IMG/VR virus record: IMGVR_UViG_3300027749_002876
Coordinates: 62,001-126,000 of that record
Reading direction: 5' to 3' (one strand)
DNA: 64,000 bases
The position numbers and the translations under genes are program-made. The notes under the pieces are model-generated. The model ran no database searches. It saw nothing but the letters and a program-made list of their open reading frames with translations, and had not been told where the DNA came from. Positions 10,468 to 60,968 of this stretch are shown here, one piece after another (position 1 is the stretch's first letter; every line of letters begins with the position of its first letter).

Positions 10468-10983
10468 ATGAGCAAAGTACTAATTGGCTTAGCAACTATA
10501 TCAGCGGTTGCAATTCTAGGAGTTCAACAATATCAACTTGCTACCATCTCAGAAGATGTAGCCGAAATCAAACAAGCCTTCATTGCACAAACCACCGAAC
10601 GTGTTTCATATAGTGAAAGTGATGAAGCATGTCTTGCTAAAAATATTTACTACGAAGCCGGTATTGAAAGTGACCATGGTAAGTATGCTGTAGCACAAGT
10701 TACACTAAACCGATTGAAGACAGGTCGTTGGGGTGATACAATTTGTAGCGTGGTCTATTCCAAAGCACAGTTTAGTTGGACATTAAAAAAGAAACTAGAA
10801 AAACCCAATGGTCAAGCATGGGCTGATAGTCAATGGATTGCTCATAGAGTATTGGGAGGTGAGCGTGTGCCTCCTCTCAGTGAAGCCATTTTTTACCATG
10901 CTGATTATGTAAGTCCGTATTGGAAGAGTAGTGTTGTAAAAATACAACAAGTTGGCCAGCATATCTTCTATACCAAAATTTGA
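10468..10983 (+). CDS. Cell-wall hydrolase (SleB/Hydrolase_2 family)
   Basis: CLAKNIYYEA, AVAQVTLNR, TICSVVY..AQFSW, FYHADYVSP.W, GQHIFY; N-terminal anchor. Confidence 0.92.
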   Translation: MSKVLIGLATISAVAILGVQQYQLATISEDVAEIKQAFIAQTTERVSYSESDEACLAKNIYYEAGIESDHGKYAVAQVTLNRLKTGRWGDTICSVVYSKAQFSWTLKKKLEKPNGQAWADSQWIAHRVLGGERVPPLSEAIFYHADYVSPYWKSSVVKIQQVGQHIFYTKI

Positions 10984-11035
10984 CAATAAATCGTTTTGGG
11001 CTTATAATAGAATCTTAAACAGTAAAGAAAAGGAC
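10980..11035 (+). promoter_or_regulatory. Early promoter cassette
   Basis: TTGACAATAAAT...TATAATAGAATCTTAAACAGTAAAGAAAAGGA. Confidence 0.9.
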
Positions 11036-11040
11036 TAGAA

Positions 11041-11313
11041 ATGACACAAGTTTATGATCGTTTGACAGAGCAGGAAAAACGTGAAGTTCGTATGTATGGC
11101 GTTACCGAAGCAGGTATGCGTGAATCTATAGAACAAAGTATTACTTTTAAATTCTCAGGTCCTGCAATGATCGCCGCTAGCCTGATGAGTGACGCCCAGG
11201 AAATGATTAATCCTGAATACGGTGATGTTGACTATATGCGAGCCGAGGATGCCCGTCAATGTCTGAATCGTGCCAAATGGGTTCTCTTTGAATATGTCAT
11301 GTCCAAAACTTGA
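11041..11313 (+). CDS. Early hypothetical protein
   Basis: Promoter and SD upstream; stop codon lies in the next -35. Confidence 0.75.
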   Translation: MTQVYDRLTEQEKREVRMYGVTEAGMRESIEQSITFKFSGPAMIAASLMSDAQEMINPEYGDVDYMRAEDARQCLNRAKWVLFEYVMSKT

Positions 11314-11365
11314 CAATAAATAGGTATTCTGCTATAATAGAATCTTAGACAGTCAAACAAAGGAT
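11310..11365 (+). promoter_or_regulatory. Early promoter cassette
   Basis: TTGACAATAAAT...TATAATAGAATCTTAGACAG...AAGGA. Confidence 0.9.
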
Positions 11366-11370
11366 ACAAA

Positions 11371-11538
11371 ATGCAAATCGCAACAGCAATCAAAGTAATA
11401 CAAAAAGATGCAGAATTCTTGGGTATGGGTTTCTTGGAAATGATGCAGTTTATTCAAAAAGACCCATTAGCACAAACACACAAAACATTAGAAGCATACA
11501 ATGTAATTAAGTTTGCAGGTGCTAAGTTTTTTGCCTAA
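11371..11538 (+). CDS. Early hypothetical protein, 55 aa (MQIATAIKVIQKDAEFLG...), not in the ORF track
   Basis: AAGGA SD; fills the gap between two promoters. Confidence 0.75.
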   Translation: MQIATAIKVIQKDAEFLGMGFLEMMQFIQKDPLAQTHKTLEAYNVIKFAGAKFFA

Positions 11539-11540
11539 AT

Positions 11541-11593
11541 TTGACAATAAATCAAATTGGGTATATAATAGAGTCTTATTCAATCAAAAGGAA
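11541..11593 (+). promoter_or_regulatory. Early promoter cassette
   Basis: TTGACAATAAAT...TATAATAGAGTCTT. Confidence 0.9.
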
Positions 11594-11598
11594 ACAAA

Positions 11599-11946
11599 AT
11601 GTTAGTAGTCCATAAATTTCTCAAAACCGATGGCAAGGGTTACTGGTCACAAGTTGTTAGATCCGTTAAAGTTACAGGTTTTGACCTGGACTACGTGAAT
11701 GAAGAAGGTGACTTTGGTGAGTTGCGTGTATACTTTGATACTAAGTATTGGGACGTTAACAGTATGGGCCTGATCTATACTGACAAACAATTCCTGAAAG
11801 AATTGAAAACACTGTTGGCCGAACAACATCTCGGTACTGACGTTTCATATTCCGAGCAAGGTATGCAAGGTGATACTTTTGTATCACTGGATTGCGGATC
11901 CGAATTCATCAAATCTTTCCAAAATTTGCTTACAGTGGAACTGTGA
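11599..11946 (+). CDS. Early hypothetical protein
   Basis: SD and promoter upstream. Confidence 0.75.
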   Translation: MLVVHKFLKTDGKGYWSQVVRSVKVTGFDLDYVNEEGDFGELRVYFDTKYWDVNSMGLIYTDKQFLKELKTLLAEQHLGTDVSYSEQGMQGDTFVSLDCGSEFIKSFQNLLTVEL

Positions 11947-11959
11947 AAGGTAATACTAA

Positions 11960-12181
11960 ATGACTAAATTTGAAAACCTCCAGGAACTATTGTCTTTGCT
12001 CAACGAAGCGCAGGATTTGATTGAAGAAATTTACGGTGATGCAGACGAGGCTTTTGACATGTCCATCAACCTTAGTAATGTCATCTCCGATGTAGAGGTT
12101 GAGATAGATTTTGAGGACATTAAACTTGACCAAAATTTGACAATAAATGGTGTTCCTGTTATAATAGAATCTAGACAATAA
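11960..12181 (+). CDS. Acidic hypothetical protein whose 3' end reads through the next promoter
   Basis: AAGGT SD; Asp/Glu-rich. Confidence 0.65.
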   Translation: MTKFENLQELLSLLNEAQDLIEEIYGDADEAFDMSINLSNVISDVEVEIDFEDIKLDQNLTINGVPVIIESRQ

Positions 12182-12190
12182 AGAAAAGGA
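12137..12190 (+). promoter_or_regulatory. Early promoter cassette
   Basis: TTGACAATAAAT...TATAATAGAATCT. Confidence 0.88.
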
Positions 12191-12196
12191 CTCAAA

Positions 12197-12469
12197 ATGC
12201 GTACAAAAACTATCATTGACGGCTTCAATAACTCACAAAAATTCCGTGTAATTTTTAAGGGTGACGGAAGCGAAAACGATATCGGTATGTACTTGACTAT
12301 CAAGCAAATGTCCGAGCAATTTGCTACAGTTAACGCCCGCACACTTTGCTGGGATGCTATGCTTAAATTGTCTTATTTGCGTTATGAAGCCAAGCGCAAA
12401 AATGAGACAGTTCCGACAGGTCTCGGTGACACATTTAGGGGCAAACAAGTCCAAGTTGACTTGGTATAA
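12197..12469 (+). CDS. Early hypothetical protein
   Basis: AAGGA SD. Confidence 0.75.
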   Translation: MRTKTIIDGFNNSQKFRVIFKGDGSENDIGMYLTIKQMSEQFATVNARTLCWDAMLKLSYLRYEAKRKNETVPTGLGDTFRGKQVQVDLV

Positions 12470-12528
12470 AAGGTTGACAATAAATCACTTTGGGTATATA
12501 ATAGAATCTTAAACAGTAAAGAAACGGA
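12468..12528 (+). repeat. ~60-bp promoter direct repeat, identical to 12814-12874
   Basis: AAAAGGTTGACAATAAATCACTTTGGGTATATAATAGAATCTTAAACAGTAAAGAAACGGA present twice. Confidence 0.95.
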
Positions 12529-12534
12529 GTTAAT

Positions 12535-12810
12535 ATGAAAAAATCACTAATTGCAACATTGTTATTAGTATCAGGAATTGCTCATGCTGGAATTGAGCAG
12601 CCGCTTCAACAAGCAATTAACCAAGTAGGATCATCATGTGATAAGGTAACTCAAGTTTTTCAGAGTAGCGGGACATATAATATGTACAGTGTTGCATGTT
12701 CCGGTGGACAAACATATATGGTTCTAGTTAAACCTGAAACTAATTCAGCTAAGGTTATGACATGCCGAGAAATGGCAATGATTGGTACAAAGTGTTTTGT
12801 CAAATTGTAA
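12535..12810 (+). CDS. Small secreted protein with four Cys
   Basis: Signal peptide ending in AHA; flanked by the identical repeats. Confidence 0.75.
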   Translation: MKKSLIATLLLVSGIAHAGIEQPLQQAINQVGSSCDKVTQVFQSSGTYNMYSVACSGGQTYMVLVKPETNSAKVMTCREMAMIGTKCFVKL

Positions 12811-12813
12811 TTT

Positions 12814-12874
12814 AAAAGGTTGACAATAAATCACTTTGGGTATATAATAGAATCTTAAACAGTAAAGAAACGGA
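12814..12874 (+). repeat. Second copy of the ~60-bp promoter repeat
   Basis: Identical to 12468-12528. Confidence 0.95.
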
Positions 12875-23630: not shown

Positions 23631-24905
23631 ATGAAATTTAATTTAAAAAACTTCTTATCTAGTCCGTGGACTATTTTAGGATCAATTATACTTGGAGTAC
23701 TGGCAGGAATATATGCTCCTGCACAAAGTATGAACTTTGAAAGTGTTGGAGGAATTTACATTAGCTTGCTTAAAGTTGTGGTAATACCTTTCTTACTTGC
23801 AACTATTTTGGTTGGTGTTATCAGCCTACTACAAAAAGAAGGCAGTGCCGCAATGATACGCAAAATTATCATTGGCTTTGTTGGCAGTATGTTCTTGGCC
23901 GCAGTTATTGGTGTTGGTACTGTTGCACTGACCGGCAGCGAAATGACTCCTGCAAAACAAGCACAACTTGGTGCTATTGTCAACGATAAAGAATCTGGTA
24001 GTGATCTTAACATAACACTAAAAGAACCAATGCCTGCCGCACCGCACGTTGACCCAATGCAAATGGCACAGAAGTTTATTCCAGAAAATATTTTTAATAC
24101 ACTAGCCGCTGGCGAGAGTTTAAAGATTGTTATCTTTTGTTTAATCTTTGGTATTGCATTAGGTAACTTAAAAACTACTGGTCAAGAAATGCTAGTGGAT
24201 ATATTAAAGAGCGTACAACAGGCCAGTATCAGTATTTTTAAATTCTTAAACTACTTTCTACCGTTTGCACTATTGGCAATGATTAGCAGCCAAGTTGGTA
24301 AGGTTGGAGTTGGTATTTTCTTGACCATGGTTGAGTTTATCATGCAACAGGCCATTGGTGGATTGCTTGTTGTTATTGCTGGTACTATTGTTATTTGGCA
24401 ACGTTCAGGACTAAGCTTAATGACTGTTATTAAAGAAACTAAGGAAACATTAATTGTGGCTGTTAGTTCACGCAGTAGTTTAGCATGTATTCCTTATGCA
24501 CAAGAAGCACTGCACAAATTACATTTTGATAGAACTGGTGTAGAATTAACCGTGCCATTAAGTTTTACAGTTAACCGTATTGGTAGTATTGTTTATTACG
24601 CAATTGCCACAGTATTTATTGCCAACATCTACGGTGCACCTATGGGAGTAACTGGTTTGCTGGTTGTATTGTTTGGTAGTATTTTAGCTGGATTAGCAAG
24701 TGCTGGTACAACAGGTATCTTAACAGTTGCTACAGTAGCAGTCGTTTGTGATTTATTAAAACTACCAAGTGAAGCGGTATTAGTATTATTAATTGCAGTT
24801 GATCCGTTAATGGACATGATTCGCACAGCAAGTCATGTACACGGCAATGTGGCAGTAACAGCATTTGTCTGCGACAAAGAGATAACAGATAATGGACAAA
24901 CTTAA
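23631..24905 (+). CDS. Dicarboxylate/amino-acid:cation symporter (GltP/SDF family)
   Basis: LLK..VIP, IPENIF, SSRSS, PL..TVN, AVDPLMDM.RT..HV.GN. Confidence 0.92.
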   Translation: MKFNLKNFLSSPWTILGSIILGVLAGIYAPAQSMNFESVGGIYISLLKVVVIPFLLATILVGVISLLQKEGSAAMIRKIIIGFVGSMFLAAVIGVGTVALTGSEMTPAKQAQLGAIVNDKESGSDLNITLKEPMPAAPHVDPMQMAQKFIPENIFNTLAAGESLKIVIFCLIFGIALGNLKTTGQEMLVDILKSVQQASISIFKFLNYFLPFALLAMISSQVGKVGVGIFLTMVEFIMQQAIGGLLVVIAGTIVIWQRSGLSLMTVIKETKETLIVAVSSRSSLACIPYAQEALHKLHFDRTGVELTVPLSFTVNRIGSIVYYAIATVFIANIYGAPMGVTGLLVVLFGSILAGLASAGTTGILTVATVAVVCDLLKLPSEAVLVLLIAVDPLMDMIRTASHVHGNVAVTAFVCDKEITDNGQT

Positions 24906-51871: not shown

Positions 51872-52180
51872 TTACGCAACCATCCAGTGGTCGCTTTCTT
51901 TGTATTCGATGGATTCGGCACCATCATATTCATTTATTTTGAATTCTGTTCCTACCGGCATCCATTCTACTTCTAAATCTTTCATACCACCGGTGTAGAT
52001 ATCTGGATACTTCAATGCTACATATGTTGCCAATTCATCCCATTTTTCCTTTTCAACAAACTTTACGATTGCTGGATCAAAAAGAATTTCAGGACATTCA
52101 TAGTTCCATGTGTACCATCCTGCACCGAAGCCAGGACTATACAACACTGCCACCTTACCATCTTCATTTAACTTGTTCAT
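51872..52180 (-). CDS. Conserved phage hypothetical protein
   Basis: VAVLYSPGFGAGW.TWN, F.I.EYDG.E. Confidence 0.75.
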   Translation of the reverse strand: MNKLNEDGKVAVLYSPGFGAGWYTWNYECPEILFDPAIVKFVEKEKWDELATYVALKYPDIYTGGMKDLEVEWMPVGTEFKINEYDGAESIEYKESDHWMVA

Positions 52181-52641
52181 TCTATTCTCTTAAAAGATCG
52201 CCAATCATCAATGTTTGGCTTTTCATCTTCATCATATGTCCAACCTAATGCCTTCATCATACGATGTTTGACAAGTAAGTTAGGGCTACGCCATCTTCCT
52301 ACGTCTTCAAACCCCATCATAACACCAACTTCGCATACTGCACCACTACGGCATACACCTGCAAAACAATGAACAACCACGTTCATTCTATTTTCTTTGG
52401 CATGTTGCAATAGTCTAACCAATTCGTTTGCTTGTTCTTGACTGCAACGCATTGCTTCATCTAAAGCAAAATCATTCTTCTCAATGTCCAAGAATTCAAA
52501 ATTGTGAATCTCTTTGAATTTGTGAGCAGGTGTTGGTCTCCAACTCGCAGGGTCTGTGATGCTAATCAGCATACTATTCTCTCCGGCTTCATGATGAAAT
52601 CTAGTAGGTATATCAGCGGCTGCTACATTTTCAATCCACAT
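52177..52641 (-). CDS. Protein-tyrosine/dual-specificity phosphatase-like protein
   Basis: VVHCFAGVCRS (CX5R). Confidence 0.85.
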   Translation of the reverse strand: MWIENVAAADIPTRFHHEAGENSMLISITDPASWRPTPAHKFKEIHNFEFLDIEKNDFALDEAMRCSQEQANELVRLLQHAKENRMNVVVHCFAGVCRSGAVCEVGVMMGFEDVGRWRSPNLLVKHRMMKALGWTYDEDEKPNIDDWRSFKRIE

Positions 52642-54210: not shown

Positions 54211-54864
54211 TTACTCTAAAAATAATAGGTTGTTATTTTTAAATACATCTCTCCAGTATCCTGTGTTAGGTATCAGAGCCCATAATTTAGTATTTTCAAA
54301 AACTATCAATGTTCTATTTTTTTTTGTTTGATTTAATGCGACCGCAACCCCATTAAACCAGGGATGAAAATCATCTCCTAGTAATAATCCGGTATCGGAT
54401 TCATACTTTTCAATATCATGTTTAACATCCAATAATGTATGTGAAGCATCAATAAAGGTAAGATCGTAATGTTTTACTTTCTCAAAATCTTTGCTAGAAG
54501 TAGGGTGTACATTTATATTAGCATACATTTCTTCACCTATACAAAATCTAAATGCATCATGCCATCCTGTAGCTTTTGCAATTTCTCTTGCATCAGCATA
54601 CATAATAGGATCGCCTAGTGCAAATTGCAAATTTTCAAACTCAATATTTAATAATGATTGGCTAGAAACAATTCTAAAATTATCAACTATATCCATGCTT
54701 ACAGAAGAATTTTTACCTCTATAGAGGGCAGTAGTAGAACTACCCAAAAAACAACCTATTTCTAAAATAGAACCATTATCAGGAACATAACCAGCCAATG
54801 TTGAAAGAATTATTAATTCTTTTTCGAGCATCCAACCCGGAATGTTTACATTGTATTTTTGCAT
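54211..54864 (-). CDS. Class I SAM methyltransferase
   Basis: PGWM, LEIGC..GSST, FIDASH, GDD. Confidence 0.85.
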   Translation of the reverse strand: MQKYNVNIPGWMLEKELIILSTLAGYVPDNGSILEIGCFLGSSTTALYRGKNSSVSMDIVDNFRIVSSQSLLNIEFENLQFALGDPIMYADAREIAKATGWHDAFRFCIGEEMYANINVHPTSSKDFEKVKHYDLTFIDASHTLLDVKHDIEKYESDTGLLLGDDFHPWFNGVAVALNQTKKNRTLIVFENTKLWALIPNTGYWRDVFKNNNLLFLE

Positions 54865-54884
54865 ATTGTATTTATGTTTATATT

Positions 54885-54960
54885 TGGAGCGGGAAATCGG
54901 GTTCGAACCGACGACATTCACGTTGGCAACGTGATGCTCTACCAACTGAGCTATTCCCGC
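54885..54960 (-). tRNA. tRNA-Gly(GCC)
   Basis: Cloverleaf. Confidence 0.95.
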
Positions 54961-54967
54961 ATATTCT

Positions 54968-55042
54968 TGGTACATCGACACGGTTTCGAACCGCGGACCC
55001 TCTCCGTGTAAAGGAGACGCTCTACCCCTGAGCTATCGATGC
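54968..55042 (-). tRNA. tRNA-Val(TAC)
   Basis: Cloverleaf. Confidence 0.95.
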
Positions 55043-55581: not shown

Positions 55582-56268
55582 TCACAATTCTGCATAATTA
55601 GTAATACTTGGTGGTTTAGCAAACGCATCCACATACATAATCTTACTGTTATCTTTTATTGTTAATTTATTAATGTAATTATACACTACTTCAAAAGTTT
55701 GTTTGTATATTTCGGGATTATCGTATGTAAAATGCGGAGCTATAGCTGTTGCTATTGCACCTTTGTCATTGTGTTCGGCAAATGCCCTCATCATGTGAGC
55801 TTGCATTGCTTTGCTTCCTGCATACCCCGCATAACTTGTCCATTCATTACGATTGAACTTTACTGCCATATATGATATAATAAAAATAATTTTACTATTT
55901 TCATTCATTCGTTTTAATGCTTCTACACCCAAAACATGAGGTATATGGCATGCAAGTCTTATATTCTCTTCCCATCTTTTTAAGTCAACTACACTAGTAG
56001 AAGTAAAGCAATTTTCATCATTTGGATAAGAACCTGAATTGGAATTAAAAAGAATCATATCAACAGTATCAACATCTTTGGTCACTTCATTAAATGCTTC
56101 TACTACACATTGAACACTATCAAAGTTTGCTTTGATATCATGTGGATGTCCTGTATTGTAATTCTTGTGAGATACAATATAAACGTTATGACCATCAGTA
56201 CGCATACGCAATACTAGGTCATTACCAAACTTACCGGGTTCACCTCCCCCTATTATCACTATGTTCAT
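55582..56268 (-). CDS. Short-chain dehydrogenase/reductase-like protein
   Basis: IGG...G.FG, YAGSK (YxxxK). Confidence 0.75.
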   Translation of the reverse strand: MNIVIIGGGEPGKFGNDLVLRMRTDGHNVYIVSHKNYNTGHPHDIKANFDSVQCVVEAFNEVTKDVDTVDMILFNSNSGSYPNDENCFTSTSVVDLKRWEENIRLACHIPHVLGVEALKRMNENSKIIFIISYMAVKFNRNEWTSYAGYAGSKAMQAHMMRAFAEHNDKGAIATAIAPHFTYDNPEIYKQTFEVVYNYINKLTIKDNSKIMYVDAFAKPPSITNYAEL

Positions 56269-56288
56269 ATTATGAGTCCTCAAGTATT

Positions 56289-56364
56289 TGGTGGAGGATA
56301 CCAGGATCGAACTGGTCACCTACTGCTTGCAAAGCAGCCGCTCTCCCAAATGAGCTAATCCCCC
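56289..56364 (-). tRNA. tRNA-Ala(TGC)
   Basis: Cloverleaf with G3:U70. Confidence 0.95.
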
Positions 56365-58320: not shown

Positions 58321-58860
58321 CTATTTTTTCCACCACCAAACCAATCGTTCAACTGTTGGAAAATTTTTATTGATATCTAAAACAATTGGTTTACAAACTG
58401 ATAAGTTCAACTTATTAGTCCATTCATAAAATGTTTTATAACTTAATCTATGTTTAGTACCAAAATTAGATATATGATCTTCATTATGACCTATATAATC
58501 TAAAAATGGTTGCATTCTTACTACAATATATCCACCGGGCTTGATCCAACTTACAATTTTTTCTACATCATAGAATTGATTTTCTACGGGTTTATATTGT
58601 ATGGAACCTAAACAAAGTGCGATATCTATTGATTCTTTTTCAAAGACGACATCATTTACTGAAGCCTGCATATCACTATTTGGATATGGATCAGCGTCAA
58701 AGCCAATCAAATTATGTATTTTGTCCTTGAAAAGATTTTCCCCACATCCCACATCAATTACTTTTTGCGGAAATAAGGAATTTACCTCTTCAATTAAATT
58801 GTAACCTGAATATGTGAATCCACGCATTCTAGTATCATTGTAAATATAAGCTTCATTCAT
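58321..58860 (-). CDS. Class I SAM methyltransferase (paralogue of the C-terminal part of 50287-51015)
   Basis: SG..L.EEVN...P.KVIDVGCG.N.FK..I.NLIG.D, CLGSI. Confidence 0.8.
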   Translation of the reverse strand: MNEAYIYNDTRMRGFTYSGYNLIEEVNSLFPQKVIDVGCGENLFKDKIHNLIGFDADPYPNSDMQASVNDVVFEKESIDIALCLGSIQYKPVENQFYDVEKIVSWIKPGGYIVVRMQPFLDYIGHNEDHISNFGTKHRLSYKTFYEWTNKLNLSVCKPIVLDINKNFPTVERLVWWWKK

Positions 58861-58875
58861 GAAGATATTTATCGA

Positions 58876-58950
58876 TGGCGACTCGTGGGAGAATCGAACT
58901 CCCGTAATCGGATAGACAATCCGAAGTAATGACCATTATACGAACGAGCC
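58876..58950 (-). tRNA. tRNA-Asp(GTC)
   Basis: Cloverleaf. Confidence 0.93.
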
Positions 58951-59034
58951 TAAATTAGTAGTAGTTTCTATATCACCCATTGAAACTAATAAACATTGAG
59001 AAAGAGCTTGCGTAGCAAGATTTCTATTTGTTCT

Positions 59035-59118
59035 TGGTGGAGACGGTTGGAGTTGAACCAACAGTGCCGAAGCGGAAGATTTACAGTCTCCTGGGGTTAC
59101 CAATTTTCCTACATCTCC
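59035..59118 (-). tRNA. tRNA-Tyr(GTA)
   Basis: Cloverleaf with variable arm. Confidence 0.93.
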
Positions 59119-59119
59119 A

Positions 59120-59325
59120 AATTAGGATAAGCTACTTGTTTCCACACAAGCCCTTAATTGAGCGGTTACTCTGTCCATCTCTTTTATTCTATATGTCTGT
59201 GTGCAGAGAGATACTGCCTATCAGAGTCTGCCGGGGTAGTTTCCATCCCTGCTTTTACGGTTTTCTGCCACCGGATCTCTATCGCTAATCAAACGCTACT
59301 TTGACGAAAGTAGTAACGGGATTCT
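59120..59325 (-). ncRNA. Candidate ~200-nt structured RNA between tRNA-Glu and tRNA-Tyr
   Basis: Hairpins CUACUUU-CGUC-AAAGUAG and CUUGU-GUGGAA-ACAAG; no credible ORF. Confidence 0.55.
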
Positions 59326-59326
59326 T

Positions 59327-59401
59327 TGGAAGAGCTACGGGGAATCGAACCCCGCTTGCCTGGATGAAAACCAGATGTCCTAACCGATAGACGATAGCTC
59401 C
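59327..59401 (-). tRNA. tRNA-Glu(TTC)
   Basis: Cloverleaf. Confidence 0.93.
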
Positions 59402-59402
59402 A

Positions 59403-59530
59403 TGTTATTAGTTTTGCTGACGCACTGTTTGCTATGCTCAACGGAATTGCCAGCTGGACGTACCGTTTATATACATAGTTACTCAGGGTTGACGTTTCCC
59501 CCATGGCTTACATCAGCAAAACTAATAACA
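59403..59530 (-). ncRNA. Candidate ~128-nt RNA closed by a perfect 18-bp stem
   Basis: TGTTATTAGTTTTGCTGA/TCAGCAAAACTAATAACA. Confidence 0.65.
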
Positions 59531-59767
59531 CTCTATATGAAAACACATTATGGGAACTACATTCGTCTGTCCAGGACCGTCTCCTGTACCCCGGCTTGTA
59601 CACCGGGAACTCTGAACTTCGTCATTACTGCCTAACTGCCCGTCACGTTCATAACTTTCGTTATCATACGCTTCATGATGTATGTCTTGGCGTGTATCCG
59701 TCGATACCCTTATAACCTTCGTACACCCTAACGGATCAGGTAACCCTTAATATGTTTACATATAGAG
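59531..59767 (-). ncRNA. Candidate ~237-nt RNA with a ~20-bp closing stem
   Basis: CUCUAUAUGUAAACAUAUUA/UAAUGUGUUUUCAUAUAGAG; internal CCCGG..CCGGG. Confidence 0.6.
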
Positions 59768-59800
59768 CCCTGAACTTAACAGGGATATATGAATTCTAAA

Positions 59801-59957
59801 TTTTAAAGAACTCTTGCAACTACTCTATCGTTTGTTGCTATGTGTCTATTATAACACCTTTACCATTTATTGTCAAATTCTTTTTTGTGTCTCTGTGTCC
59901 GAGAACTTGTTCAATCAATCTAAGTATCTATTATAGCACCAACTTGATTTATTGTCA
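59801..59957 (-). promoter_or_regulatory. Tandem sigma70 promoters plus boxA-like antitermination site
   Basis: Two TTGACAATAAAT..TATAAT promoters ~80 bp apart; AGTTCTTTAAAA at 59812-59801. Confidence 0.7.
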
Positions 59958-59993
59958 AACTTTGTGTTGTTGTATTTTTACAACACCTGTTAT

Positions 59994-60068
59994 TGGTCCG
60001 GCGTAAGGGAATCGAACCCCTATAAACACTTTAGAAGAATGTTGTCCTATCCGTTGAACGAACGCCAG
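59994..60068 (-). tRNA. tRNA-Arg(TCT)
   Basis: Cloverleaf. Confidence 0.92.
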
Positions 60069-60139
60069 ATATATTTCTTACTTGTCTCTATTATAGAGGA
60101 TTGTTGATTTGTTGTCAAGTTTGACAACAACTATTTGAA

Positions 60140-60215
60140 TGGCTCCTCAAGATGGGATCGAACCACCGACATTCTGATTAACAGTCAGACGCAACTACCG
60201 CTGTGCTATTGAGGA
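60140..60215 (-). tRNA. tRNA-Asn(GTT)
   Basis: Cloverleaf. Confidence 0.95.
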
Positions 60216-60222
60216 ATATTTT

Positions 60223-60298
60223 TGGTGCCCACACCATGATTCGAACACGGCACCTACGCATTACAAGTGCGTTGCTCTACCAAATGAGCTATGTGGGC
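60223..60298 (-). tRNA. tRNA-Thr(TGT)
   Basis: Cloverleaf. Confidence 0.95.
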
Positions 60299-60359
60299 TT
60301 GTGTCTTACGACATGTTTATTTAACAGCTATTGTATCATAGGAAAACTTTTATGTCAAC

Positions 60360-60920
60360 CTATGATAGCAATATTCTGCTGTGTTTGGGAACACCTGCAA
60401 GCAAGTATTCCATTTGGTCAGCAAGAATTGTTCTATGTTGTAGAATCATATTTTCGTAGTGGTTTGGGATATACGGAGTGTATAATAATTCCATACGGGA
60501 ATCTTTCAATGTCTTATGACCTTTTTTGCTGTTACAATCTTTACATGCCGTAACAACGTTCATCCAGGTGTTTTCGCCACCTTTACTTTTTGGATGAATA
60601 TGGTCTCTACTTAACGCATGGTAGTTAGCAAAGTATTCTCCGCAATATGCACAAACGTGTCTGTCACGACCAAACAATGTTTTATTAGTTAGTGCCACAC
60701 ATGAATGTTTATATGGATTGAATCCATGACCTTTGATAGCAATAATGCTATTAGCTTCCAAGTAACTTAATGTACCGTCATTTTGCATACCACCACGATA
60801 TTTAGCCACAATATTGCCCATACTCCATGCAATGGCATCTTTTGCTTTATAGGTAATTGCGTCATCATTTGATATCCATTGCCGGGGAACTCCCGAGATA
60901 TCTAGTGCTAGAACAGCCAT
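60360..60920 (-). CDS. HNH endonuclease
   Basis: LFGRDRHVCAYCG...SRDHIHP.SKGG...W.NVVTAC..CN..KG. Confidence 0.92.
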   Translation of the reverse strand: MAVLALDISGVPRQWISNDDAITYKAKDAIAWSMGNIVAKYRGGMQNDGTLSYLEANSIIAIKGHGFNPYKHSCVALTNKTLFGRDRHVCAYCGEYFANYHALSRDHIHPKSKGGENTWMNVVTACKDCNSKKGHKTLKDSRMELLYTPYIPNHYENMILQHRTILADQMEYLLAGVPKHSRILLS

Positions 60921-60968
60921 GTAGTACTCCTTTTCTGTTATTATCACTATATGTATTTAATATTATAT

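What the first reader, a model, noticed from the sequence alone, without database searches (positions are those of the whole stretch)
59790..59960. rrn-style leader on the phage tRNA/ncRNA operon: tandem promoters, hairpin, boxA
Seen on the minus strand: two consensus promoters about 80 bp apart, then a GCAAC..GUUGC hairpin, then AGUUCUUUAAAA. Established: rRNA operons use P1/P2 and boxB-boxA (UGCUCUUUAACA) to recruit NusB/NusE antitermination. Inference: the phage borrows host rRNA antitermination to transcribe kilobases of untranslated RNA.
Basis: partly seen in the sequence, partly recalled or inferred. Interest (0 to 1): 0.6.

Follow-up and report, generated by a model that had tools for sequence, protein, structure and literature searches.

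The report
Phage ncRNA leader with rRNA-type boxA
A freshwater jumbo phage puts two strong promoters, a small hairpin and an exact copy of the bacterial rRNA-operon "boxA" anti-termination signal in front of a conserved structured RNA and tRNA genes, which suggests it uses the host's rRNA transcription machinery to make its own untranslated RNAs.

Summary
On the minus strand there are two perfect TTGACA-N17-TATAAT promoters 82 bp apart, a 5-bp hairpin, then AGTTCTTTAAAA (59812-59801).

GTTCTTTAAAA is an 11/11 match to the functional boxA consensus GYTCTTTAANA. It is the same 11-mer shown to boost an untranslated CRISPR array in Legionella. It also lies upstream of 16S rRNA in at least 120 bacterial species, mostly Beta- and Gammaproteobacteria.

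Against a roughly 78% identical sister genome the 12-mer is 12/12 conserved while its flanks are 33-36% identical. Twelve of twelve relatives found through the downstream RNA alone carry it. Two of three lineages where another structured RNA precedes that RNA (GOLLD-type by Rfam in L011) also carry it; one does not. The hairpin keeps its place but changes sequence (at least 10 stems). Tandem promoters recur in 14 of 19 leaders.

boxA goes with one transcription unit, not the whole tRNA island. That unit is a new ~193-nt structured RNA, seen as a discrete species in metatranscriptomes, plus tRNAs. About 1 kb is untranslated here.

Most likely this is a host Nus-factor (NusB/NusE) loading site. 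Binding and host are untested. It is a new member of a known kind.

The parts
59930..59958 (-). Promoter P1: TTGACA, 17 nt, TATAAT, with TG before the -10.
   Evidence: 12/12. Retained in sister genome B with -10 TATACT. A second upstream promoter is present in 14 of 19 related leaders.
59878..59886 (-). A-tract AAAAAAGAA directly upstream of the P2 -35, UP-element-like.
   Evidence: Sequence. It is conserved in B and most relatives. The comparison with the UP-element proximal subsite consensus AAAAAARNR is from memory and was not tested.
59848..59876 (-). Promoter P2: TTGACA, 17 nt, TATAAT, with TG before the -10. Predicted start near 59841.
   Evidence: 12/12. B has TACAAT. The start site is inferred. 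Three of four metatranscriptome runs have no contig over 59846-59939, and one has low coverage of 59752-59845.
59816..59838 (-). Hairpin 1 at the 5' end of the transcript: GCAAC, 13-nt loop, GTTGC. It occupies the boxB-like position.
   Evidence: It folds in the MFE structure. The same position holds a stem of different sequence in relatives: GTTGA/TCAAC, GTTGAG/CTCAAC, GTTAG/CTAAC, GTTAA/TTAAC, GTTAAC/GTTAAC, ACTAGT/ACTAGT, ACATTAA/TTGATGT and others, often with GAAA or GCAA loops.
59801..59812 (-). boxA: AGTTCTTTAAAA, with the 11-nt core GTTCTTTAAAA at 59811-59801.
   Evidence: 11/11 to GYTCTTTAANA. Same 11-mer as the functional Legionella boxA and as rrn-leader boxA in at least 120 species. 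12/12 conserved against B with flanks at 33-36% identity. The only invariant block in 20 leaders. Mean P(unpaired) 0.74 against 0.45 elsewhere.
59759..59791 (-). Hairpin 2 after boxA: CATATATCCCTG, TTAAGTT, CAGGGCTCTATATG.
   Evidence: It covaries in relatives: CCCTGT/ACAGGG, ACCTGTA/TACAGGC, GCCTTG/CAAGGC, ACGCT/AGCGT, GTAGCAC/GTGCTAC, GTAACCC/GGGTTGC.
59551..59746 (-). Structured ncRNA, module 1, about 193-196 nt: GGGTTACC...GTAGTTCCCA.
   Evidence: No Rfam match even at E<=10. 98.5% identical to B where tRNAs are 48-72%. Consensus fold has 29 pairs, 16 with compensatory changes in 17 sequences. Metatranscriptome contigs end at 59551/59552 and 59742/59744 in two runs, one directly followed by adapter sequence.
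59402..59550 (-). ncRNA module 2, closed by a long stem: GTTATTAGTTTTGCTGA / TCAGCAAAACTAATAAC.
   Evidence: 93% identical to B. MFE -49.7 kcal/mol with a terminal long helix. Present in many relatives.
59327..59401 (-). tRNA-Glu (TTC), the first tRNA of the boxA-headed unit.
58876..59118 (-). tRNA-Tyr (59035-59118) and tRNA-Asp (58876-58950), downstream in the same untranslated stretch.
   Evidence: No strong intrinsic terminator lies between P2 and here. Co-transcription is inferred.

Best explanation
The region is the leader of a phage transcription unit for untranslated RNAs: a conserved ~193-nt structured RNA, a second structured module, then tRNA-Glu, tRNA-Tyr and tRNA-Asp. It is built like the leader of a proteobacterial rRNA operon.

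Proposed mechanism:
1. Host sigma-70 RNA polymerase starts at two tandem consensus promoters. P2 has an A-tract upstream.
2. The first roughly 25 nt of the P2 transcript fold into a small hairpin.
3. The next single-stranded segment is a boxA, GUUCUUUAAAA.
4. Host NusB-NusE (S10) binds this boxA as it emerges. With NusA, NusG and SuhB it converts the polymerase into a Rho-resistant, processive complex, as on rRNA operons and boxA-led CRISPR arrays. Transcription then runs through the untranslated RNA genes.
5. The leader is cut off afterwards, leaving the mature ncRNA.

Shown by computation: the elements, their conservation and covariation, their identity with known boxA sequences, and the discrete processed RNA.

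Inferred: the start site, Nus-factor binding, protection from Rho, co-transcription of the tRNAs, and a proteobacterial host.
For: - Two 12/12 promoters are present. The record has 54 perfect promoters against 1.2 expected.
- GTTCTTTAAAA matches the functional consensus GYTCTTTAANA of Baniulyte et al. 2017 at all 11 positions.
- NusB-NusE reads an 8-nt single-stranded boxA.
- The identical 11-mer is the boxA of the L. pneumophila Lens CRISPR array. Placed in a leader, it raised pre-crRNA about 10-fold along an untranslated array.
- The identical 11-mer lies 91-151 nt upstream of the 16S 5' end in at least 120 species, mostly Beta- and Gammaproteobacteria. In the leaders I printed it mostly follows a promoter and hairpin.
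- Against sister genome B, boxA is 12/12 identical with flanks at 33% and 36%.
- All 12 relatives found through the downstream RNA alone, with leader sequence available, carry the 11-mer. So do 2 of 3 lineages in which another structured RNA lies between the leader and this RNA. In L011 that RNA is Rfam GOLLD and the motif is GCTCTTTAAAA.
- boxA is the only invariant block in the alignment of 20 leaders.
- In 14 relatives' loci checked on both strands, the motif occurs only on the RNA-coding strand: 13 against 0.
- boxA is predicted mostly unpaired, between two covarying hairpins.
- Tandem promoters occur in 14 of 19 leaders.
- The record has no NusB, NusG, S10, sigma-70 region 2 or RNA polymerase beta-type domain. 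Host factors are therefore needed.
- Metatranscriptome contigs hold the ncRNA with sharp ends and without the leader.
Against: - No binding or read-through experiment exists for this sequence.
- The host is unknown, so I could not compare the motif with the host's own rrn boxA.
- The GU-rich boxC seen after boxA in most of the proteobacterial rrn leaders I inspected is absent from all phage leaders.
- One related lineage (L015, L017, L024, L030) expresses the same ncRNA behind a promoter and a tRNA without a canonical boxA. boxA is therefore not obligatory.
- The other tRNA-cluster promoters in the window lack boxA.
- The motif is AT-rich and occurs at near-chance frequency genome-wide.
- Fourteen of the related loci were found by requiring the motif. 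Only the set found via the ncRNA core is unbiased.
- Many of the leaders are phylogenetically related, so counts overstate independence.
- The RNA evidence comes from assembled contigs of RNA libraries. These cannot prove a start site and may contain DNA.
Confidence: 0.7

Rival explanations
1. The conserved 11-mer is an RNA processing or stability signal rather than a Nus site. An AU-rich single strand between two hairpins would be cut, for example by RNase E, to release the mature ncRNA. The 5' hairpin would protect the primary transcript from decay.
For: The leader is absent from the discrete ~193-nt RNA seen in RNA libraries, so it is removed. The motif is AU-rich, predicted single-stranded and flanked by stems. 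A 5'-terminal hairpin begins 2-6 nt after the predicted start.
Against: The mature 5' end, about 59744-59746, lies 55 nt downstream of the motif and not at it. From general knowledge, endonuclease sites of this kind are degenerate and would not be expected to keep 11 of 11 positions fixed while both flanks diverge to 33-36% identity. This rival does not explain why the sequence equals a functional boxA and the boxA of at least 120 rrn leaders. The two roles are not exclusive.
Confidence: 0.12
2. It is a lambda-nut-like site that needs a phage-encoded N-type protein. boxA plus one of the adjacent hairpins would recruit a small phage antiterminator together with the host Nus factors.
For: boxA sits between two structure-conserved hairpins. 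Several of them carry GNRA-type loops: GAAA, GCAA, GUGA. The phage has hundreds of unannotated small ORFs.
Against: The loop sequence and size of both hairpins vary between relatives, 4 to 24 nt for hairpin 1, unlike the conserved boxB loops of lambdoid phages. The hairpin-then-boxA order is the rrn order seen in bacterial leaders that need no N. The same 11-mer works in a leader without any phage protein. No N-like protein was identified, although none could be with these tools.
Confidence: 0.1
3. It is a DNA-level site such as an operator or a phage regulator binding site just downstream of P2. Another possibility is a sequence conserved only by hitch-hiking with the ultra-conserved ncRNA (recent gene conversion or transfer between phages).
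For: The ncRNA just downstream is 98.5% identical between two genomes that are otherwise about 78% identical, so recent exchange of this segment is plausible. The motif contains the palindrome TTTAAA.
Against: The motif is separated from the conserved ncRNA by diverged sequence. The linker is 36% and hairpin 2 is 76% identical, so it is an island and not part of a transferred block. It stays invariant in leaders whose promoters, hairpins and even downstream RNA differ, as with GOLLD in L011 and a tRNA in L021 and L029. It is strictly strand-specific. It lacks the dyad symmetry of an operator.
Confidence: 0.05

Closest known systems
rRNA operon leaders of Proteobacteria (P1/P2, boxB-boxA-boxC; NusB/NusE/NusA/NusG/SuhB antitermination complex)
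   Same: Both have tandem sigma-70 promoters, a hairpin directly before boxA, and boxA about 20-40 nt into the transcript. Both run into a long untranslated structured RNA with tRNAs, and the leader is removed by processing. The boxA 11-mer is identical to that of at least 120 sampled rrn leaders.
   Different: This one is phage-encoded. It has no boxC and no rRNA. A second covarying hairpin follows boxA. The product is a ~193-nt RNA of unknown function plus tRNAs. No second, spacer boxA was seen.
boxA in CRISPR-array leaders (Stringer et al., as cited in PMC7862264; L. pneumophila Lens array)
   Same: The 11-mer GTTCTTTAAAA is exactly the same. It sits in the leader of a long untranslated, processed RNA. 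There it raised transcript levels about 10-fold along the array.
   Different: That is a host defence locus and not a phage gene. No tandem promoters or flanking hairpins are described there.
Lambdoid phage nutL/nutR sites (boxA plus boxB, N protein)
   Same: In both, a phage uses a boxA to load host NusB-NusE and make transcription termination-resistant.
   Different: In lambda, boxA precedes boxB, boxB has a conserved loop bound by N, and the target is mRNA of delayed-early genes. Here the order is hairpin-boxA-hairpin with variable loops, no N homologue is known, and the target is untranslated RNA.
suhB 5'UTR boxA and other non-rRNA boxA targets (Baniulyte et al. 2017, PMC5725501)
   Same: Both are perfect matches to GYTCTTTAANA outside rRNA operons. 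That paper notes its survey did not consider non-coding RNAs.
   Different: On suhB the Nus complex represses by promoting Rho termination or blocking translation. Here an anti-termination or processivity role is expected.

Membership tests
rrn-type boxA leader (Nus-factor loading site) | Sequence matches the functional boxA consensus | tested here: met
   GTTCTTTAAAA against GYTCTTTAANA is 11/11. It is identical to the experimentally active Legionella boxA.
rrn-type boxA leader (Nus-factor loading site) | The same sequence is used as boxA in genuine rRNA operon leaders | tested here: met
Most of the leaders I inspected show hairpin and boxC context.
rrn-type boxA leader (Nus-factor loading site) | Lies in the transcribed leader, shortly after a promoter and ahead of a long untranslated RNA | tested here: met
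   The distance from the -10 end to boxA is 25-44 nt in 20 leaders. Downstream there is about 980 nt without an ORF here and at least 1.7 kb in L011. The start site itself is inferred.
rrn-type boxA leader (Nus-factor loading site) | Single-stranded and on the RNA strand only | tested here: met
   Mean P(unpaired) is 0.74 against 0.45. In 14 relatives' loci checked on both strands, 13 matches lie on the RNA strand and 0 on the opposite strand.
rrn-type boxA leader (Nus-factor loading site) | Conserved in relatives beyond its flanks | tested here: met
   12/12 against B with flanks at 33-36%. It is the only invariant block in 20 leaders. It is present in 12 of 12 unbiased relatives. One lineage lacks it.
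rrn-type boxA leader (Nus-factor loading site) | boxB-like hairpin before boxA (accessory in rrn) | tested here: met
   20 of 20 leaders have a stem of at least 5 bp ending 1-9 nt before boxA, with at least 10 different stem sequences. No shuffle out of 500 reaches the observed mean.
rrn-type boxA leader (Nus-factor loading site) | GU-rich boxC after boxA (accessory in rrn) | tested here: not met
   No GTGTGGG-like element follows boxA in any phage leader. It is present in most of the proteobacterial rrn leaders I inspected.
rrn-type boxA leader (Nus-factor loading site) | Tandem P1/P2 promoters | tested here: met
   Present here and in 14 of 19 related leaders.
rrn-type boxA leader (Nus-factor loading site) | Matches the boxA of the phage's own host | tested here: inconclusive
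   The host is unknown. The habitat is freshwater, lake or estuary. The motif is typical of Beta- and Gammaproteobacteria, which fits the sigma-70 consensus promoters, but this is not a host assignment.
rrn-type boxA leader (Nus-factor loading site) | Binds NusB-NusE and confers read-through of Rho-dependent terminators | not testable with these tools
   This needs binding assays and reporter or ChIP experiments.
lambda-type nut site | boxA followed by a boxB hairpin with a conserved loop, bound by a phage N protein | tested here: inconclusive
   A hairpin follows boxA, but its loop is not conserved across relatives. No N-like protein could be sought by sequence.
GOLLD RNA (RF02032), as identity of the downstream RNA | Match to the Rfam covariance model | tested here: not met
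   No match in the window or anywhere in the record. A relative, L011, has a true GOLLD (213.5 bits) between the same kind of leader and this ncRNA.

The most novel reading that the evidence does not exclude
The boxA leader is a dedicated biogenesis module for large structured phage RNAs. A group of freshwater jumbo phages would load the host rRNA antitermination and chaperone complex (Nus factors plus SuhB) onto polymerase specifically at genes for ornate RNAs. These are GOLLD in one relative and a new ~190-nt covarying RNA family here. The RNAs would then be transcribed fast, shielded from Rho, folded co-transcriptionally and cut out of a leader, much as rRNA is. This would make expression and folding of GOLLD-class RNAs experimentally tractable and tie them to the ribosome-biogenesis machinery.
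Probability: 0.3. Interest if true: 0.75.

Novelty: new member of a known kind. Interest (0 to 1): 0.6.

Why it matters
boxA-dependent Nus complexes are known from rRNA operons, lambdoid nut sites, a few mRNAs and CRISPR arrays. A phage-borne, apparently N-independent rrn-type leader in front of structured ncRNA and tRNA genes would add a new class of targets. The survey of Baniulyte et al. explicitly did not consider non-coding RNAs.

It has three practical uses:
- A host clue. The boxA type is typical of Beta- and Gammaproteobacteria.
- An explanation for how long untranslated phage RNAs could escape Rho.
- A simple genetic handle, boxA point mutations, for studying the phage 'ornate' RNAs found near tRNA islands, whose function is still unknown.

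In the searchable literature I found no paper that links boxA with GOLLD, ROOL or phage tRNA islands.

Tried and rejected
- **Near and distant DNA searches** of the region against GenBank phages found only a tRNA-Thr match to phiKZ-like phages, or nothing. Relatives had to come from IMG/VR.
- **tblastn and PHROGs** on large window ORFs gave no phage family. The 424-aa ORF resembles sodium:dicarboxylate symporters.
- **Rfam** at gathering and at E<=10 gave no family for the leader or the ncRNA. GOLLD is absent from the whole record.
- **A generic best-stem shuffle test** is only moderately discriminating, because random AT-rich 48-mers often form 5-bp stems. I rely on the changing stem sequences instead.
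- **MAFFT** did not align the hairpin arms consistently. I therefore did not run the formal pair-count tool on hairpin 1, and the stems are listed from a script instead.
- **Spurious hits.** Four loci from the 16-mer core scan (L013, L018, L020, L022) and one from the boxA pattern scan (L038) lie in coding sequence and were discarded.
- **A possible pairing of boxA with the downstream AGAATTC** in this phage is not conserved in relatives and was rejected as a feature.
- **TGTCTTTAATGA** right at the start of the transcript in L015, L017, L024 and L030 was not counted as a boxA.
- **Host identification** was not achieved.
- **Literature search for the 11-mer** mostly returned unrelated primer sequences, apart from the Legionella paper.

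Full report
**1. What is in the sequence**

Read on the minus strand, the region holds the following elements.

| Element | Coordinates | Sequence or note |
|---|---|---|
| tRNA-Arg | 60068-59994 | upstream neighbour |
| P1 | 59958-59930 | TTGACA, 17 nt, TATAAT |
| P1 leader | 59929-59877 | 53 nt, ends in AAAAAAGAA |
| P2 | 59876-59848 | TTGACA, 17 nt, TATAAT |
| Hairpin 1 | 59838-59816 | GCAAC, 13-nt loop, GTTGC |
| Linker | 59815-59813 | AAG |
| boxA-like motif | 59812-59801 | AGTTCTTTAAAA |
| Hairpin 2 | 59791-59759 | second hairpin |
| ORF-free stretch | to 59402 | about 345 nt, then tRNA-Glu at 59401 |

- Both promoters score 12/12.
- ARAGORN finds 27 tRNA genes on this strand between 53293 and 63157.

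**2. Where the window comes from**

- The window is bases 62001-126000 of a 524,565-bp IMG/VR virus record with 36.7% G+C.
- A self-comparison shows that bases 1 to about 172.9 kb are collinear, in inverted orientation and at 65-91% identity, with bases 172,924-520,476. The window lies in the first part.
- Bases 172,924-177,012 reappear at 99.6% identity as the last 4,089 bases of the record.
- The simplest reading is a chimera: a circularly closed genome of about 347.5 kb ('B') joined to a 173-kb piece of a related phage ('A').
- Related IMG/VR contigs of 348,701 and 367,104 bp fit that size.
- For this finding the structure is useful, because B is a built-in relative at about 78% identity.
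- Reads holding this stretch come from freshwater, lake and estuary metagenomes of 17 studies.

**3. Are the elements more than chance?**

- The record has 54 perfect TTGACA-N16-18-TATAAT sites against 1.2 expected.
- Many of them share an extended consensus and stand in front of small ORFs, so they are the phage's strong host-type promoters.
- No sigma-70 region 2 or RNA-polymerase beta-type domain is detectable in the record. Use of host sigma-70 polymerase is therefore the natural inference. Very divergent phage polymerases could escape Pfam.
- The boxA-type motif alone is not rare: GYTCTTTAANA occurs 9 times against 5.3 expected.
- The exact 11-mer occurs twice, at the homologous leaders of A and B.

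**4. Conservation**

Identities between A and B by sub-region:

| Sub-region | Identity |
|---|---|
| tRNA-Arg | 72% |
| P1 | 83% |
| P1 leader with A-tract | 89% |
| P2 | 83% |
| Start, hairpin 1 and linker | 33% |
| AGTTCTTTAAAA | 12/12 |
| Next 9-11 nt | 36% |
| Hairpin 2 | 76% |
| ncRNA module 1 | 98.5% |
| ncRNA module 2 | 93% |
| tRNA-Glu locus | 48% |

- The motif is thus an island of identity in a diverged leader.
- B has a different hairpin at the same place: GTTGA, 17-nt loop, TCAAC.

I then collected relatives from IMG/VR in two ways.
- **By a 16-mer of the downstream ncRNA**. This set is unbiased with respect to boxA. After removing chance hits in coding DNA, 12 of 12 loci of the simple type carry GTTCTTTAAAA 61-68 nt before the ncRNA. 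In L021 the distance is 124 nt with a tRNA in between.
- **By requiring the motif 35-65 nt before the ncRNA start**. This set is biased, so it is used only for anatomy.

In a second group another structured RNA lies between the leader and the ncRNA. Rfam confirmed it as GOLLD only in L011; the other members were either scanned without a GOLLD match (L015, L017) or not scanned.
- L011 has tandem promoters, a hairpin and GCTCTTTAAAA ahead of at least 1.7 kb without ORFs. That stretch includes a GOLLD RNA at 213.5 bits.
- L029 has a promoter, a hairpin, GTTCTTTAAAA and then a tRNA.
- One lineage (L015, L017, L024, L030) has no canonical boxA.

Across the 20 distinct leaders:
- The only invariant block is the motif.
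- In 14 relatives' loci checked on both strands, the motif occurs 13 times on the RNA strand and never on the other.
- Hairpin 1 is always present, ending 1-9 nt before the motif, with at least 10 different stem sequences and often a GAAA or GCAA loop.
- Hairpin 2 also covaries.
- boxA is predicted mostly unpaired: 0.74 against 0.45 for the rest of the leader.
- A second promoter 82-102 bp upstream is present in 14 of 19 leaders with enough sequence.

**5. Comparison with known boxA elements**

- Baniulyte et al. 2017 derived the functional consensus GYTCTTTAANA for gamma-proteobacteria. The phage sequence matches all 11 positions.
- Stagno et al. 2011 showed that NusB-NusE reads 8 single-stranded nucleotides of boxA, almost all contacts coming from NusB.
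- Ellis et al. 2021 took 5'-GTTCTTTAAAA-3', the boxA of the natural L. pneumophila Lens CRISPR array, and inserted it in the leader of a synthetic array. They obtained about 10-fold more precursor RNA along the whole untranslated array.
- These are mostly Beta- and Gammaproteobacteria: Thauera, Zoogloea, Azoarcus, Comamonadaceae, Nitrosomonas, Coxiellaceae, Francisellaceae, SAR86 and Succinivibrionaceae. A few are Bacteroidota.
- In the leaders I printed, the motif mostly follows a TTGACA/TATAAT-type promoter and a hairpin, and most are followed by a GU-rich boxC.
- The phage leader therefore reproduces the promoter-hairpin-boxA part of such rrn leaders exactly, but has no boxC.
- The record encodes no NusB, NusG or S10.

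**6. What the leader drives**

- The downstream RNA has no Rfam match.
- Seventeen homologues give a consensus fold of 29 pairs, 16 with compensatory changes. The fold includes a GGG/CCC closing helix and a long-range helix between CCUGAUCCGUU and GACGGGCAG..UUAGG.
- Contigs from four metatranscriptome libraries were laid on 59000-60400.
- Two independent runs hold a piece with the same ends, 59551/59552 to 59742/59744. One is followed directly by Illumina adapter sequence. A third run covers 59572-59720.
- The leader is not in these pieces. Three of four runs have nothing over the promoter region.
- This fits a discrete ~193-nt RNA cut out of a longer precursor. Contigs cannot prove a start site, and DNA may be present in such libraries.
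- A second module (59550-59402) folds with a terminal helix built on a 17-bp inverted repeat.
- tRNA-Glu, a 208-nt spacer, tRNA-Tyr and tRNA-Asp follow. The spacer is very deeply covered in one RNA run.
- A 179-aa methyltransferase-like ORF starts at 58860, so the untranslated stretch behind boxA is about 1 kb here.
- The other promoters of the tRNA island (60358, 60118, 58098, 56626) have neither hairpin nor boxA.
- boxA is thus tied to the structured-RNA unit rather than to tRNA clusters in general.

**7. Interpretation**

- The best explanation (confidence 0.7) is a host Nus-factor loading site of the rrn type. It would make transcription of an untranslated phage RNA unit processive and Rho-resistant.
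- It may also aid co-transcriptional folding, as the rRNA complex does. This last point is inference from the rRNA literature listed.
- Rivals are a processing or stability signal, a nut-like site needing a phage N-type protein, and a DNA-level or hitch-hiking explanation. Each explains part of the data. None explains the identity with functional and rrn boxA sequences, the island-like conservation and the strand specificity together.

**8. Novelty**

- The mechanism is known. The context appears new: a phage-borne, apparently N-independent rrn-type leader ahead of a structured ncRNA, and ahead of GOLLD in a relative.
- No paper in the searchable library links boxA with GOLLD, ROOL or phage tRNA islands.
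- I classify it as a new member of a known kind.
- Function, host and start site remain to be tested.

Noticed in passing
whole record G000 (window = 62001-126000); G000 1-172,923 against 172,924-520,476; 172,924-177,012 = 520,477-524,565: The 524,565-bp 'genome' looks like a chimera. It seems to be a circularly closed phage genome of about 347.5 kb (4,089-bp overlap at 99.6%) joined to a 173-kb fragment of a related phage. The two parts are collinear, inverted and 65-91% identical. Related contigs of 348,701 and 367,104 bp support a genome size of about 350 kb. The megaphage size and CheckV's '100% complete' should not be trusted.
   Followed up: partly
window 59551-59746 (-): There is a new structured ncRNA family of about 170-200 nt (GGGTTACCTGATCCGTTAGG ... 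GACGGGCAGTTAGGCAGTAATGA ... AGTTCCC) with repeated GACGG hairpin loops. It has no Rfam match. Its consensus fold has 29 pairs, 16 of them compensated. It is 98.5% identical between two phages that are otherwise about 78% identical. It appears as a discrete RNA in freshwater metatranscriptomes and lies next to GOLLD in some relatives.
   Followed up: partly
window 59402-59550 (-): A second conserved non-coding module is closed by a 17-bp inverted repeat (GTTATTAGTTTTGCTGA / TCAGCAAAACTAATAAC), MFE -49.7 kcal/mol. It is present in many relatives and could be an RNase III-type processing stalk or a separate RNA.
   Followed up: partly
window 59235-59328 (-), spacer between tRNA-Glu and tRNA-Tyr: Word depth is very high (about 960-1,570) in one lake metatranscriptome, with short contigs covering 59263-59313. 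This suggests another abundant small RNA in the 208-nt spacer.
   Followed up: no
L011:8986-9452 (-) and L039:6365-6839 (-): Related phage contigs carry a GOLLD RNA (213.5 bits, with an embedded tRNA-like hit) and a permuted two-piece tmRNA (137 bits) in the same tRNA islands.
   Followed up: partly
record-wide; in the window e.g. 36151, 37124, 37364 (-) and 10980-12820 (+): A repeated promoter-plus-5'UTR cassette (TTGACAATAAAT-N-TATAATAGAATCTTAaACAGTAAAGAAAAGGA-N-ATG) stands in front of dozens of small ORFs. They cluster in a few blocks, probably the early gene class.
   Followed up: no
window 60360-60947 (-), 58321-58860 (-), 54211-54981 (-), 55582-56319 (-), 52177-52641 (-): Protein genes are interspersed in the tRNA island. 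They include an HNH endonuclease (PHROG E 3e-27). The other matches are weak, most below Pfam cut-offs: two methyltransferase-like ORFs, a short-chain dehydrogenase-like ORF and a dual-specificity phosphatase-like ORF.
   Followed up: partly
window 23631-24905 (+): A 424-aa ORF resembles sodium:dicarboxylate / glutamate symporters at 24-27% identity to bacterial transporters. This is an unusual membrane-transporter gene for a phage.
   Followed up: no
G000 about 218-220 kb, 270-278 kb, 287-288 kb, 358-362 kb, 452-454 kb, 512-519 kb (outside the window): A large dispersed family of internally repetitive segments, about 66-75% identical to each other, appears in the self-comparison. They are probably repeat-domain genes.
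   Followed up: no
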